Source: Phaeosaccion multiseriatum (taxonomy: Eukaryota; Protista; Ochrophyta, other classes). Taken from it: a stretch of DNA of 64,000 bases. The notes under the pieces were generated by a model that did no database searches, had not been told where the DNA came from, and was given only the letters and a program-made list of their open reading frames with translations. The DNA lies in NCBI GenBank assembly GCA_965112735.1, contig OZ218960.1, forward strand, positions 744,001-808,000, given 5' to 3'. Position 1 is the stretch's first letter, and every line of letters begins with the position of its first letter. This document shows, one piece after another, positions 7,287 to 11,399 of the stretch. The position numbers and the translations under genes were made by a program.

Positions 7287-7508
7287 AGCGAGAAGCGAGC
7301 GACACATGGATGGGTGGATGGACTGGATGGGTGGCAATGGATGGATCGCCCCCGAAGATGGGCAACTTATTCAGGGGATACGGCGAACAAACGAGCGGGT
7401 GAGGAGGGTAAATAACCGGGAGACCGGTGTTGTTGATACTCCATGGCACTGATCAATTTTTTATCTATTGATGACCGGTTTTGGTGGGGCGAGATGCCCC
7501 ACTCGGTG

Positions 7509-7570
7509 AAAGTGGGTATTTTTAGTACCCAATTTTTTTAAAAGTGGGTATTTTTAGTACAGTACCCAAT
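7509..7570. repeat. Duplicated 20-bp subterminal repeat AAAGTGGGTATTTTTAGTAC
   Basis: Exact copies at 7509-7528 and 7541-7560, with a TGGGTA...TACCCA dyad. Confidence 0.85.
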
Positions 7571-7708
7571 ATGGACCAGTAGCGCCCCTCCCCCCCCCCC
7601 TCCTTTTTGGTGTATCTCTCCCCTCCTCCTCCAAAATATACTACGCTATGATATGACGATTTAATGGTATTACCACGATAACAATGGTATTCATATTTAC
7701 AGACACAC

Positions 7709-8093
7709 TTAGTGTCCGTCCTCAATCATGCATGGCATACAGTAGTAGTCAAAATCGCCTTCCGCAAAACCCTTGCTGTCGCAAAACTCGACGGTGCACA
7801 TGTGGTGCACGAGGTTTCCACACGCTCTTTCGGATGGGCAGAGGAACAGCTTGACTTGCGAGGGCTTAGTACAGCCATACGAGCATGTGAAGGCCATGTC
7901 TCCCTCTCTCAAGCCGCCCAACGACGGCGCTGCTGACGCGGCAGCAGCGGCAGTAGCGGCCGCAGCGGCCGCATCAGAGGCAGCAGCAGAAGCAGCATCA
8001 GAAGCAGTACCAGTACCAGTACGCTGTTTTTTTTGGGCCCCCCTTCCCCCACCCCTTCCTCCTCGTCCTCCTCCGGCTCCGCCTCCTCCTGTT

Positions 8094-8130
<37 letters not shown>

Positions 8131-10772
8131 TGCTGCTGCCACCTCCCTCCTCGTCGTCCTCTGCACCGCTATCACCTCCATCCCCCTCCTTCGACTCGTC
8201 TGCACCAGTGCCACTTTCCTTCGCCCTCGCCCGCTTCGCCCGTTTTTTCGCGTCCGCCTGCTGCGCGCTCCATAAATTATACACGGTGGTCCACACCAGC
8301 TGATTGAAGCGGCGCTTGTGAGAATCAGAACGAGACTTGATGTCAAAGGCGTCTTTGACTGCGTCAAACATGCTTCGCGCTTCTTCAAGCGTCGGCTTGT
8401 CCTTCCAGAGCCCCTTTTCTTTCGCCGCGGATTCAATCGCACCCATCAAACAGCAAAATTTTGACATCCTTCGCTTCTCCGCCCTCCCCTGCACGTCTGC
8501 TGTCGTGAATTCTCGAAGGCGAGGAGTGCCTGTCATCCAAGCATCCCAAGCAGCGCGCACAGTGAAGCTAGGGACCTCAAAGTGCTCGGGAAGGGTATGC
8601 CACCGGCCGTTGTAGAGATACAGAGGTGGCTGATCTGCACCTGCACAAGAAGAAGAAGAGGGCGGGGCGCTGCTCGAACCCTCACCAAGGCCCAGAGTGC
8701 CTGCCTGGTGAGCCGCGAGAAGGTCGCTGAGCCCACTCTTAGAAAAGGCTGCGTCGAGGGTCGTCTGCAGGGCCCTGCTCACACCCAGACTGGTGACAGT
8801 GCCAGAGGCCTGTGCATTCTCCTCCAGAACGTCACGGATCAGCGTCTCCAAGTCGACCTTGATCGTCTGGCCCAACACCTCAAGCTTGCCGCCTAGAGAG
8901 GCCACGCTGTCCGCCACGACTTGGAATTGCCTCAGCTGCACGACGTGGTGAGGAATCCCGGTTGCAGAAATCTCGTCCGTCTCGTCCGGATACTTCAGCA
9001 CGACATGCTCTGAAAGGTCCGCCAGCAACCTTTGATCTCGGAAGAGCTGTGTCGTGAAAAGAGGGTGATTCTCCTGAAGAGTGCTGCGCAGAAAGCCGGC
9101 GTGGTACACCACACTGGCAAGACAGAATTCAGCCACCTTCCTCAATCTCAGCGGCACGTCCCTGAAGCAGCTCACAATGGCTCCCGCGAGCACGTCTTCA
9201 ATGCCCTCCTTCGCTGTGCCGTCCACCTTGAGGCGCTGAAAAAAGGGAGGAAGCAATGCAAACTCCTTCGCTGAGATGTTCGCGCCGGAGGCAGCCCGGC
9301 CCACATACTGATCTGCTGCATTGATGGGGTTGAAGTAGATGCCCTGCACGCCGGGAAGAGACCATCCCATTCGAAGTTGCACAGCAATTGGGTTGGGAGC
9401 AGCGGACGAGCCGCTTGTGACGTGCGAGGCAGCGCCCTTGCGCCCAGAATGAGTGCCGAGGTCCTCTGGAGTCAGCCCCATGCCTTCCAAAATGGACGAG
9501 TTCGCCGCCGCCGTACGTCTGAGGAAGCCGCAATACCTATCGTACTGATTGTTGCCAGCGAACAGCGCGTTCTTCTCAAAACCAAAGCTCAGGAGGTAAA
9601 CACCAAGCGCGAGGACGGGGCAGATCTCCGGCATGATTGGATTCGCGTAGACGTGGCGAGGATGTCGGGCCTTCTCTCCCAGCTGATCGCCCTTTTGCTT
9701 CCCAAAATAGACGCAGAGCGCGTCCCCCTTCCACTCGAGATGATCGAGACAAATCTCCACACAGTTGGTGGCGCGGCACATCAGATTCCAGGAGAGAACG
9801 AGGAAGGGGTGGCCAAAGGCGCCCTGTCTGTGCCCGTTCTCACAGACTGCCGAGCTCAGCATTGCTGCGATGTACACAAGCGAAGGAAACAGTGGCAACC
9901 AAAGACGGCGTCAGGGCTAGGAAGTGAGTGGGGGGCATTCAATGCATCAGCCACTTGTCTCCACCCACTCCACTAGTTTCCACTGTCCACTGACTCCACA
10001 CAGCTGGGAATTTACCTTTGGCAAGAGCGCGGTAGAGAGCGAACGGCATGGGAGCCTTCCCTTCTCTGACTTCGACATTTCCCTCCTGCTTCTCTCCTGC
10101 GATCGTCCTCTTCAGCCCCTTGGTGAGCGTCGCAAGGTCGCTTTGCAATTTGCGGTGCTGTTCCTCCTGATGGTAGTCTCTGTACAGATTGAAGAGTGCA
10201 GAGCGTTTCGACTGTGCACCGGCCTTGGATAAGCCCTTCGGCCCCTTCTTGACTTCAAGCAGCCACCCGAAGAACGCGTCGGCTGTCAGCAGATGGAACA
10301 GCAAAGGGTGCGGCGCCCGAGGTGCTTGGATCAAGTGTGCCTTCACCCGCTTCGTCCACTGCGCCTCAGCCTTCTTCTTGGCCTTTGCTTGGGCTTTCGC
10401 TGCTCTCGACACCTCAGCCGGCGTCTGCTGTGCCGCTGCAGTGGCACCACCCGCTCCGCCAGGTGCGGCGGCTGCTGCGGCTGCTGCTGCTCTCCTCTGT
10501 GCTTCCTCCTCTTCCCCATCTTCCCCGTCTTCCTCCTCTTCCCCTTCCGGTGGAGCAAATGCTGTCCTGAAGTCAGGGTCCAGAAGCTCCGGGTGCTTGC
10601 GGAAGAGGTATCGGATCAGCATGGTGGAGGCGCATGCATATCCACTTCTCGAGCGTGGGGCGATGGTGTTGTTTCGGAGGTTCTGAATCTGCTGCTGCTC
10701 TGCAGTAAGCGGTGCTTCTTCCCCCTCTGCTGCTGGTGCTTCCGGAACCGTAGCAACAGCGACGTCAGCCAT
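7709..10772 (-). CDS. Crypton tyrosine recombinase with C-terminal PHD-like finger, 970 aa; exons 10772-10016 and 9864-7709
   Basis: Two ORFs join in frame across a 151-bp GT-AG intron (10015-9865), giving ...LYRALAKAMLSSAV...GHPFLVLSWNLMCR. The catalytic set is intact: R (NLMCR), K (KQKGDQ), HxxR (DLGTHSGRKGAA), W (LRMGW), Y (GVQGIY). Confidence 0.88.
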
Positions 10773-10953
10773 GGTATGCTCTGTTCTCCTGCAAATTCAC
10801 GTGGGAGATGCCCCTCCCACCACTGGCATCAGCTGTTACAGCCGGGTATCGTCCGCGCAGCCGCTGCTCCTCTTACATAGCTGCCCTGTGCAAATATGCT
10901 GATGCTGTGAATGAATAAAAATCCATGTGGGGAGGGGGGGGAGAATGCCCCAC

Positions 10954-10989
10954 AACCAAAAAATATTGGATAACCAAAAAATATTGGAT
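10954..10989. repeat. Tandem 18-bp subterminal repeat AACCAAAAAATATTGGAT x2
   Basis: Exact copies at 10954-10971 and 10972-10989, with a CCAA...TTGG dyad. Confidence 0.85.
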
Positions 10990-11399
10990 AAAAAACTTGA
11001 AAAACGAGCATTTGTGGCCCATAAAATATCCAAAACCATAATTTCGTGGGGCAGGTGCCCCACATCACGGTACTATTAGACATACGGACTACAGAGAACT
11101 GAAATTAAATGTGATGAATCGACCAAAAATGATCTGCGAAGAATGCACACACCCTCGCACCCACTCACCACCATAGGACCATAAGACTCTGTGCCTTCAC
11201 CTCCCCATAAGACTCTCTATGTCTCCAGGTCCCTCGGTCAACGCGACGTGTGCAGGGGCGCCACTGCTCGCGAGCCTCTCCCTTCATCATGTGTCATGCA
11301 TGTGCGTGTGTGTGTGCGTGTGTGTGTGCGTGCGTGGGTGCGTACCAGCTTCTTTCTCAGGCACTGACCCACTGACCGTGTAAGTACACGACAAGCCCG

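What the first reader, a model, noticed from the sequence alone, without database searches (positions are those of the whole stretch)
7484..11063. Matching GTGGGGC-N4/5-GCCCCAC palindromes bracket the recombinase gene: candidate attL/attR-like sites
Seen: GTGGGGC-GAGAT-GCCCCAC at 7484-7502 and GTGGGGC-AGGT-GCCCCAC at 11046-11063, each a GC island in an AT-rich flank 200-290 bp from the CDS. Related half-sites cluster upstream of the ATG: GTGGGAG-ATGCCC-CTCCCAC at 10801-10820 (sharing GAGATGCCCC with the left site) and TGTGGGG...ATGCCCCACA at 10926-10954. Established: tyrosine recombinases act on inverted binding arms around a short spacer (lox/FRT/att), whereas Cryptons are usually described with only short terminal direct repeats. 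Inference: these are the enzyme's binding or crossover sites, defining a ~3.6-kb excisable unit, and the promoter-proximal copies could provide autoregulation. The 4-5 bp spacers are shorter than the usual 6-8 bp and differ from each other, so they may be binding rather than crossover sites.
Basis: partly seen in the sequence, partly recalled or inferred. Interest (0 to 1): 0.78.

Follow-up and report, generated by a model that had tools for sequence, protein, structure and literature searches.

The report
Subterminal palindromes of a Crypton transposon
The two matching palindromes are real and belong to a young, 34-copy tyrosine-recombinase ("Crypton") jumping gene of a stramenopile alga, but they lie 19 and 37 bases inside its true ends, so they are most likely docking sites for the recombinase, not the points where DNA is cut and rejoined; distant relatives have the same layout, which gives the first testable candidates for Crypton recognition sites.

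Summary
Observation confirmed: both palindromes are at the stated coordinates, and about 65 of the 67 such sites in the 67-Mb genome lie in copies of this element (control pattern: 1).

Interpretation partly supported. The mobile unit is 7465-11100 (3,636 bp), not 7484-11063. Twenty-nine copies (mean divergence 0.5%) share sharp ends: A-W-CT before ATTGATG on the left, and always GAACT on the right. A host repeat occurs empty 119 times with one AACT. Three filled copies carry AACT at both junctions. Strand exchange is therefore at the 2-4-bp terminal repeat, as expected for a Crypton, and the palindromes are subterminal.

The gene encodes a tyrosine recombinase: R-K-HxxR-W-Y are present and the model matches Flp at Z 16.1.

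New evidence: relatives only 35-55% identical in protein carry their own short palindromes or half-sites on both sides of the gene. Several use related words (GTTGGAG, GTTGGAC, GTGGGA). In the one other family with mapped ends, the distances to the ends are nearly the same (20 and 45 nt).

Best reading, about 0.6: family-specific recombinase-binding sites, analogous to arm-type or accessory sites. Binding and autoregulation are untested. First-stage readers noted the same palindromes on other copies.

The parts
7465..11100 (-). Complete Crypton-type element (3,636 bp); the gene is on the minus strand
   Evidence: Homology among at least 32 copies starts and stops here. There are 34 left ends and 33 right ends in the genome. 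Mean pairwise divergence is 0.52%.
7463..7466 (+). Left junction tetranucleotide ATCT. The A-W part comes from the target; the CT is invariant.
   Evidence: Across 29 copies: A at 25/29, then T18/A9/C2, then CT at 28/29.
11097..11100 (+). Right terminal AACT, forming a direct repeat with the left junction; the presumed crossover region
   Evidence: Invariant in 29/29 copies. The empty host repeat has a single AACT and the filled copies have AACT on both sides.
7484..7502 (.). Subterminal palindrome at the 3' side of the gene: 7-nt arms, 5-nt spacer, 19 nt from the element end
   Evidence: As single-stranded DNA, window 7465-7510 folds at -11.1 kcal/mol, z -4.6.
7513..7531 (.). TGGGTA-N7-TACCCA palindrome. 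It lies in the first unit (7509-7528) of a 20-nt direct repeat whose units start 32 nt apart.
   Evidence: (D1, I2).
7545..7568 (.). Second TGGGTA...TACCCA palindrome, with a 12-nt spacer
7709..9864 (-). Exon 2 (inferred): catalytic domain, the conserved C-terminal region, low-complexity Ala/Gly runs and a Cys/His-rich tail
   Evidence: ORF. Catalytic residues R42, K69, H150, R153, W179 and Y188 are conserved in homologues. Fold match to Flp Z 16.1, Ndc10 13.9, Cre 12.3.
9865..10015 (-). Intron (inferred): GT...AG, 151 nt, phase 1
   Evidence: Read together with the frames. The resulting spacing between the GKxP..LY motif and FGH matches homologues. The joined protein was not searched.
10016..10772 (-). 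Exon 1 (inferred): N-terminal SAM-like / core-binding region
   Evidence: ORF starting at ATG 10772. Weak Phage_int_SAM_4 match (E 0.043), with better matches in 3 homologues.
10801..10820 (.). Palindrome GTGGGAG-N6-CTCCCAC, 29 nt upstream of the ATG
   Evidence: I10; identical in 29/29 copies.
10926..10954 (.). TGTGGGG-N15-CCCCACA inverted pair
   Evidence: I11; conserved in all copies. No hairpin stability beyond shuffled sequence (z 0.03).
11046..11063 (.). Subterminal palindrome at the 5' side of the gene: 8-nt arms, 2-nt spacer, 37 nt from the element end
   Evidence: (I9).

Best explanation
The window holds one intact copy (7465-11100) of a young, many-copy Crypton-type DNA transposon whose only gene is a tyrosine recombinase.

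Shown: the element has no inverted termini. It ends in a short direct repeat, A-W-CT on the left flank and AACT as its last four bases. It inserts at a single AWCT in AT-rich DNA. One host repeat that contains AGAAACT is a hot spot.

Inferred: the element excises as a circle and integrates by conservative recombination within this 2-4-bp repeat, which is the standard Crypton model.

Shown: the two GTGGGGC palindromes lie 19 and 37 nt inside the ends. With three to four further GTGGG...CCCAC sites, they would all cluster around the junction once the element is circular.

Inferred, as the most likely mechanism: each palindrome binds a dimer of the element's own recombinase, or one of its extra domains. 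This high-affinity binding brings catalytic subunits to the weakly specific terminal crossover sequence and pairs the two ends. The closest analogies are the arm-type sites of lambda Int and Tn916 Int, and the accessory sites of other tyrosine recombinases. The palindromes are not the sites of strand exchange.
For: Ends and crossover:
- There are at least 32 full-length copies with unrelated flanks and sharp common boundaries.
- The empty host repeat has one AACT in 119 copies (control 0). Three independently filled copies have AACT at both junctions.
- There is no terminal inverted repeat (8/40 matches).

Recombinase:
- The catalytic R, K, HxxR, W and Y are all present and at least 90% conserved.
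- The AF2 model has pLDDT 91.9 and matches Flp at Z 16.1 and Cre at 12.3.

Site specificity:
- About 65 of 67 genome-wide sites are in element copies.
- None occurs in 60 kb of the window outside the element or in 84 kb of host flanks.

Comparative evidence:
- Relatives at 35-55% protein identity carry related palindromes about 200 nt after the stop codon, plus half-sites before the ATG. L046 has GTTGGAG (7 sites, 1.6 expected). L047 has GTTGGAC (6 sites, 0.62 expected). L056 shows the same pattern. Each perfect palindrome has p of about 0.001-0.004 by shuffling.
- Other relatives carry palindrome pairs of quite different sequence. Five of 65 loci have identical-arm pairs, against 0.01 expected.
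- In the P0019 family, six insertions map the ends, and matching palindromes lie 45 nt inside the 5' end and 20 nt inside the 3' end. The corresponding distances here are 37 and 19 nt.
- Isolated half-sites in direct repeat (L047, L056, L109) favour protein binding to duplex DNA over hairpins.
Against: - No binding or recombination experiment exists for any Crypton, so 'recombinase-binding' is an inference from anatomy and comparison.
- The 29 copies are too alike (0.5%) for conservation within the family to mean anything.
- Ends were mapped in only two families. In L046, L047, L056, L104 and L105 two palindromes lie about 94-106 nt apart on one side of the gene, and their position relative to the ends is unknown.
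- I found no convincing inverted core-type arms around the crossover in this element (best 6/9 with a 9-nt spacer).
- Which protein domain would read the heptamer is unknown.
- The positions, upstream of the ATG and about 200 nt after the stop codon, also fit transcriptional signals.
Confidence: 0.6

Rival explanations
1. The palindromes are themselves the crossover sites (attL/attR-like, as lox or FRT would be). Recombination between them would excise the 3.58-kb segment 7484-11063.
For: They are matching inverted arms around a short spacer at both sides of a tyrosine-recombinase gene.
Against: All copies carry the same 19 nt and 37 nt outside the palindromes, and homology stops sharply at 7465 and 11100. 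Empty and filled host-repeat sites place the junction at AACT. No solo hybrid palindrome footprints were found among the 34 left-end and 33 right-end matches. Arms of 7-8 nt with spacers of 2-5 nt are too short for the usual 6-8-bp staggered cleavage, and the two spacers differ.
Confidence: 0.03
2. The palindromes are expression signals of the element: a promoter or operator element upstream, and a 3'-end or terminator-type stem-loop in the transcript about 200 nt after the stop codon. They may be bound by the recombinase for autoregulation only, with no role in recombination.
For: Three sites lie within 29-291 nt upstream of the ATG. One lies 207 nt after the stop codon, a distance that recurs in relatives (roughly 145-335 nt). 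The stems are perfect and stable.
Against: The motif is almost absent from the rest of the genome, so it is not a host signal. The sequence differs between families while the layout and the distance to the element ends stay the same. The same word is used on both sides of the gene, which is unexpected for a promoter element paired with a terminator. Direct-repeat half-sites cannot form hairpins.
Confidence: 0.15
3. The palindromes act as folded single-strand hairpins recognised by the recombinase, as in integron attC or CTX-phage sites. The geometry recalls IS200/IS605: subterminal hairpins, a target tetranucleotide at the left flank, and a related tetranucleotide as the last bases of the element.
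For: There are subterminal perfect stems at both ends with no inverted termini. The left flank is AWCT and the element's last four bases are AACT. Identity at the junction is very short (2-4 bp), which is unusual for duplex tyrosine-recombinase crossover.
Against: The enzyme has a Flp/Cre-like fold, not an HUH fold. Relatives carry single half-sites and palindromes whose second copy is imperfect without wobble compensation. The stems are short (7-8 bp). No evidence of any single-stranded intermediate is available.
Confidence: 0.08
4. The palindromes are functionless passengers that are frequent only because the element is frequent.
For: Within this genome their conservation is uninformative, because the copies differ by only 0.5%.
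Against: Comparable matched palindromes recur in many distant relatives far above chance, at similar distances from the gene and from the element ends.
Confidence: 0.03

Closest known systems
Crypton DNA transposons, CryptonS group (Goodwin et al. 2003; Kojima and Jurka 2011, PMC3212892)
   Same: The only gene is a tyrosine recombinase with the full catalytic set. There is no reverse transcriptase, no DDE transposase and no inverted termini. The ends carry a short direct repeat that is the presumed crossover. The host is a stramenopile. [quoted passage not shown] Homologues occur in Phytophthora and in a diatom, where the protein is fused to a C48 peptidase.
   Different: The terminal repeat is only 2-4 bp (CT / AWCT-AACT), not the 5-6 bp, mostly TATGG, reported for CryptonS. 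The copy number (34) is high for a Crypton. The protein has an extra Cys/His-rich tail. Family-specific subterminal palindromes are not described in the Crypton papers I could search; Kojima and Jurka state that they found no conserved nucleotide sequences.
Lambda Int / Tn916 Int type systems with arm-type sites
   Same: Strong binding sites are set back from a weakly specific crossover. Several sites cluster around the junction of the circular form. As for Tn916, targets are AT-rich and there is little homology at the crossover.
   Different: Here the sites are short palindromes, not asymmetric arm sites. No separate arm-binding domain has been identified. The system is eukaryotic. Nothing has been shown biochemically.
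Cre-lox / Flp-FRT simple sites
   Same: The recombinase fold is closest to Flp (Z 16.1), and the sites have inverted arms around a short spacer.
   Different: lox and FRT have 13-bp arms around a 6-8-bp spacer in which exchange occurs. Here the arms are 7-8 bp, the spacers 2-5 bp, and exchange maps 19 and 37 nt away.
IS200/IS605 ends and integron attC sites
   Same: Subterminal hairpin-capable palindromes at both ends, no inverted termini, insertion next to a specific tetranucleotide, and no target duplication.
   Different: IS200/IS605 use an HUH enzyme and single-stranded DNA. attC stems are longer and carry extrahelical bases. Neither feature was seen here.

Membership tests
Crypton (tyrosine-recombinase DNA transposon) | Encodes a tyrosine recombinase with the catalytic R...HxxR...Y (plus K and W/H) | tested here: met
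   R42, K69, H150, R153, W179 and Y188 of the exon-2 protein are at least 90% conserved in 23-45 homologues. The fold matches Flp, Cre, Xer and lambda Int at Z 10-16.
Crypton (tyrosine-recombinase DNA transposon) | No reverse transcriptase or second transposase in the element | tested here: met
   The recombinase gene takes 3,064 of the element's 3,636 bp. Pfam finds nothing else in its product.
Crypton (tyrosine-recombinase DNA transposon) | No terminal inverted repeats or long terminal repeats | tested here: met
   The first 40 nt compared with the reverse complement of the last 40 nt give 8/40 matches.
Crypton (tyrosine-recombinase DNA transposon) | Short direct repeat at both termini, one copy in the empty target | tested here: met
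   AWCT on the left and AACT on the right in 29 copies. A single AACT in 119 empty host repeats; AACT on both sides in 3 filled ones.
CryptonS group | 5-6-bp terminal direct repeats, mostly TATGG | tested here: not met
   The ends are CTATTG... and ...GAACT. The repeat is 2 bp invariant and 4 bp at most.
CryptonS group | Conserved C-terminal region, no GCR1_C domain, relatives in oomycetes and diatoms | tested here: met
   The alignment continues about 350 residues beyond the catalytic domain, with conserved W, P and R columns. There is no GCR1_C hit in Pfam. Homologues occur in Phytophthora palmivora, P. megakarya and Chaetoceros.
CryptonS group | Clusters with Repbase CryptonS recombinases in a tree | not testable with these tools
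lox/FRT-type crossover site | Inverted arms of 11-13 bp around a 6-8-bp spacer in which strands are exchanged | tested here: not met
   Arms are 7-8 bp and spacers 2-5 bp. The junction lies 19 and 37 nt outside the palindromes.
Arm-type / accessory-site tyrosine-recombinase systems (lambda, Tn916) | Recombinase or a partner protein binds sites distinct from the core, and these sites are needed for the reaction | not testable with these tools
   Only the anatomy and its recurrence in relatives support this.
IS200/IS605 | HUH (Y1) transposase | tested here: not met
   The protein has the tyrosine-recombinase fold.

The most novel reading that the evidence does not exclude
The subterminal palindromes act as folded single-strand hairpins that guide a eukaryotic tyrosine recombinase to cut at a nearby tetranucleotide. 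This would be a eukaryotic counterpart of integron attC or IS200/IS605-style transposition. It would explain why only 2-4 bp are shared at the junction and why the element has no inverted ends.
Probability: 0.07. Interest if true: 0.9.

Novelty: new variant of a known kind. Interest (0 to 1): 0.55.

Why it matters
Cryptons are the least understood class of eukaryotic DNA transposons. No transposition, binding or excision experiment has been published. The reference survey (PMC3212892) states that no conserved nucleotide sequence could be found among them.

This work maps the ends of an apparently active family to the base, using natural empty and filled sites. It also shows that this lineage carries family-specific short palindromes at fixed distances inside both ends, in relatives as far apart as 35% protein identity.

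That gives concrete substrates for a first biochemical reconstitution: two 18-19-bp sites plus about 40-bp ends. It also gives a rule for finding Crypton ends in other genomes. If the sites are confirmed, each family would offer a matched recombinase and site pair from eukaryotes, which is of interest as a source of new site-specific recombination tools.

Tried and rejected
- Pfam on both exon products gave only a sub-threshold SAM-like hit. A profile of 23 homologues against PDB sequences found nothing relevant. The fold had to be shown by structure prediction and fold search.
- Conservation of the palindromes among the 29 copies cannot be tested, because the copies differ by only 0.5%.
- A search for core-type inverted arms around the circle junction found nothing convincing in this element (6/9 with a 9-nt spacer). 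In the P0019 family it was only suggestive (10/14 around an 8-nt spacer).
- I looked for short non-autonomous derivatives and for head-to-tail junctions in the genome and found none.
- The divergent or fragmentary copies at C1:2722862, C14:2353581 and C14:1474863 could not be read.
An 8-sequence alignment worked.
- A 4-bp target duplication was rejected. The right end is always AACT, while the left junction is ATCT in 18 of 29 copies.
- The 18-nt direct repeat at 10954-10989 is a tandem duplication private to this copy, not a family feature.
- The spliced protein was not assembled or searched.
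Full report
**1. The observation**

GTGGGGC-GAGAT-GCCCCAC is at 7484-7502 and GTGGGGC-AGGT-GCCCCAC at 11046-11063. The window contains two matches to GTGGGGC-N4-6-GCCCCAC against 0.01 expected. 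The bare heptamer is not enriched (24 against 18.4).

In the whole 67.1-Mb assembly (22 contigs; the window is C11:744001-808000) the pattern occurs 67 times, against once for the reversed control. Nearly all sites carry one of the two spacers seen here and come in pairs about 3.54 kb apart.

The inner sites at 10801-10820 and 10926-10954 are also real. Two more palindromes with the same outer bases (TGGGTA...TACCCA) lie at 7513-7531 and 7545-7568.

**2. What the unit is**

A DNA search of the genome found at least 32 full-length copies at 98-99% identity. Homology begins at about 7464 and stops at about 11100. End-only searches find 34 left ends and 33 right ends. All are in full or nearly full copies, with no short derivatives.

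Aligning 29 copies with their flanks gives sharp boundaries:
- The left flank reads A (25/29), then T/A/C (18/9/2), then CT, followed by ATTGATGACC.
- The right end is always ...CAGAGAACT.
- The flanks are AT-rich and otherwise unrelated to one another.
- Mean pairwise divergence is 0.52%, so the family is very young.

There is no terminal inverted repeat (8/40 matches).

**3. Natural empty sites**

Three copies (L013, L015, L023) lie at the same position of an abundant host repeat. Uninterrupted copies of that repeat happened to be in the fetched flanks. The pattern GGAATCACC-NN-AGAAACTGAAAG occurs 119 times in the genome, against 0 for the control.

The empty form has a single AACT. The filled forms read ...AGAAACT|ATTGATG... 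on the left and ...AGAGAACT|GAAAG... on the right. One AACT in the target therefore becomes an AACT at each junction.

The right end is always AACT, while the left junction is ATCT in 18 of 29 copies. This is therefore not a 4-bp target duplication. It is what conservative recombination within a very short shared sequence would give (2 bp invariant, 4 bp at best), which is the Crypton model of Goodwin et al. and of Kojima and Jurka (PMC3212892).

Three independent hits among about 120 copies of a 23-bp motif, out of 29 insertions in 67 Mb, show real target preference. The target AGAAACT resembles the element's own right end, AGAGAACT.

I verified this independently here.

**4. The gene**

On the minus strand an ORF starts at ATG 10772 and a second runs to the stop codon at 7709. 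I infer one intron (10015-9865, GT...AG, 151 nt, phase 1). This model gives the spacing seen in homologues between the GKxP..LY motif and the FGH motif, and a product of 970 residues.

- Pfam gives only a weak SAM-like hit in exon 1.
- The word search found 71 homologues at 27-48% identity. They come from marine and freshwater metagenomes, EukProt sets, Phytophthora, Hanusia, and a Chaetoceros protein fused to a C48 peptidase.
- The catalytic residues R42, K69, H150, R153, W179 and Y188 are present and conserved.
- An AlphaFold model of residues 1-346 (pLDDT 91.9) matches Flp (Z 16.1, 225 residues, 3.3 A), Ndc10 (13.9), Cre (12.3), Xer, Tn1549 Int and lambda Int. Foldseek ranks the same proteins first.

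The product is a tyrosine recombinase, and the element meets the defining features of a Crypton. It differs from the published CryptonS description in lacking the 5-6-bp, mostly TATGG, termini.

**5. Where the palindromes lie**

- The left palindrome begins 19 nt inside the left end, which is the 3' end in gene orientation.
- The right palindrome ends 37 nt inside the right end, which is the 5' end.
- They are subterminal and are carried along with the outer 19 and 37 nt in every copy, so they cannot be the crossover points.
- No hybrid solo palindrome footprints were seen among the end matches.
- The assembly contains no head-to-tail junction.
- In a circular form, all six GTGGG-type sites would cluster in the roughly 570-bp non-coding stretch around the junction. 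The two main palindromes would lie about 72 nt apart, start to start.

**6. Comparative evidence**

Copies within the genome are too alike to be informative, so I looked at distant relatives.

Relatives carrying a related word (proteins 38-55% identical to one another and to this one):
- L046, on a 167-kb metagenome contig, has GTTGGAG seven times in 12 kb (1.6 expected). These include a perfect GTTGGAG-N4-CTCCAAC 199 nt after the stop codon and an imperfect copy 105 nt further on.
- L047 has GTTGGAC six times (0.62 expected). Three are direct copies about 100 nt before the ATG. One is a perfect palindrome and one an imperfect palindrome 95 nt further on.
- L056, the best protein hit, has two direct half-sites just before the ATG. 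A perfect GTTGGAC-N4-GTCCAAC lies 214 nt after the stop codon, and an imperfect one 106 nt further on.

Perfect palindromes of the class GTKGGNN-N2-6-NNCCMAC occur in each of these three loci (p about 0.001-0.004 each by shuffling). They occur nowhere in 60 kb of the window outside the element, nor in 84 kb of host flanks.

A scan of metagenome contigs gave 80 more relatives:
- Five of 65 loci of at least 2 kb (the 80 plus those fetched earlier) contain two or more perfect palindromes with identical 7-nt arms, against 0.01 expected.
- Others have pairs in a shifted register (L067, L083-L088).
- The words differ between families (for example TTAGGAC, ATCACGAAAC, CAAGGCA, TGGGGAG, GGTTCC, TCCGGA), but the layout recurs. 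There is usually one site 145-335 nt after the stop codon and one to three before the gene.

**7. A second family with mapped ends**

Six contigs carry the identical protein P0019 with different flanks, so they represent several insertions. Their common sequence ends in AT-rich targets with a 2-3-bp repeat.

This family also has a matching palindrome pair built on CCGG-N6-CCGG. One lies 45 nt inside the 5' end and the other is followed by 20 nt to the 3' end. The corresponding distances here are 37 and 19 nt. The geometry is the same and the sequence is different, as expected for sites that co-evolve with the protein that reads them.

**8. Mechanism**

Shown: the ends, the target, the recombinase fold and catalytic residues, the subterminal position of the palindromes, their restriction to the element, and the recurrence of the layout in relatives.

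Inferred: excision as a circle and exchange within AACT/AWCT; binding of the palindromes by the element's recombinase; and a role for that binding in bringing catalytic subunits to a weakly specific crossover and in pairing the ends. The closest analogies are the arm-type sites of lambda Int and Tn916 Int.

Half-sites in direct repeat in several relatives favour a protein reading duplex DNA over hairpin formation. I put this reading at about 0.6.

The rivals are:
- Expression signals or autoregulation only (0.15).
- Folded single-strand substrates of the attC or IS200/IS605 kind (0.08). The stems are stable as single-stranded DNA: -11.1 kcal/mol for window 7465-7510 and -7.9 kcal/mol for window 11040-11100.
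- Crossover within the palindromes (0.03, contradicted by the end mapping).
- No function (0.03).

**9. Comparison with what is known, and limits**

The two Crypton papers I could read describe only short terminal direct repeats. One says explicitly that no conserved nucleotide sequences were found. A full-text search for Crypton together with palindrome or recombination site found nothing relevant. Within the held library, therefore, the subterminal palindromes are undescribed. Subscription literature and Repbase entries were not searchable.

First-stage readers of this scan noted the same palindromes on other copies (s1-363051, s1-331681, s1-343486). No follow-up on them was visible to me.

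Limits:
- Nothing was tested biochemically.
- Ends are mapped in only two families.

**10. Verdict**

The element is a new variant of a known kind. Interest is moderate, and higher for transposon specialists, because it offers the first concrete candidate recognition sites for a Crypton recombinase.

Noticed in passing
L006:1324, L011:6344, L014:1288 (+ strand), L030:1324 (- strand); occupied in L013, L015, L023; genome-wide by pattern: An abundant host repeat of about 35-50 nt, containing GGAATCACC-NN-AGAAACTGAAAG and usually followed by GT-rich sequence, occurs at least 119 times. It is a hot spot for this Crypton: three independent insertions at the same AACT. What the repeat itself is (a transposon end, a regulatory motif or something else) was not worked out.
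   Followed up: partly
window 7709-7900 (minus strand): The recombinase ends in a Cys/His-rich tail laid out like a PHD finger (C-x3-C ... C-x5-C ... H-x2-C ... C-x2-C). None of the 22 aligned homologues has it. Other reports of this scan deal with it, so it was not examined further here.
   Followed up: no
window 10954-10989: The 18-nt tandem duplication (AACCAAAAAATATTGGAT, twice) is private to this copy. The other 28 aligned copies have a single unit.
   Followed up: yes
L048, L066, L085 (metagenome relatives): Some relatives were assembled as head-to-tail repeats: a 2,774-bp period at 100% identity over 2.4 kb (L048), 2,981 bp at 100% (L066), and 3,245 bp at 82% (L085). This fits circular forms or tandem arrays created by integration of a circle into a resident copy.
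   Followed up: partly
L104:168-282, L105:2135-2256, L127:902-1109, L047:3731-3843, L046:7251-7373, L056:2914-3041: In several relatives, successive palindromes are spaced 93-106 nt start to start, roughly nine helical turns. In L127 this spacing occurs twice in a row. The reason is unknown, and the ends of these elements are not mapped.
   Followed up: no
window 8054-8141 and 7565-7654: These are the most variable stretches among the 29 copies. One is a run of GCA/GCT triplets encoding poly-Ala inside the recombinase gene. The other is a poly-C/poly-T tract in the 3' non-coding region. They behave as microsatellite-like length variants, not as point divergence.
   Followed up: no
29 aligned copies (right end 11040-11100, and 10920-10930): The family splits into two sub-lineages, distinguished by a few linked substitutions: 16 against 13 copies at 11040/11064, and 16 against 13 at 10921/10926. 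This suggests two recent source copies.
   Followed up: no
L022 left flank: One copy lies directly beside TTAGGG-type repeats followed by a TA tract. This may be a subtelomeric or interstitial telomere-like site.
   Followed up: no
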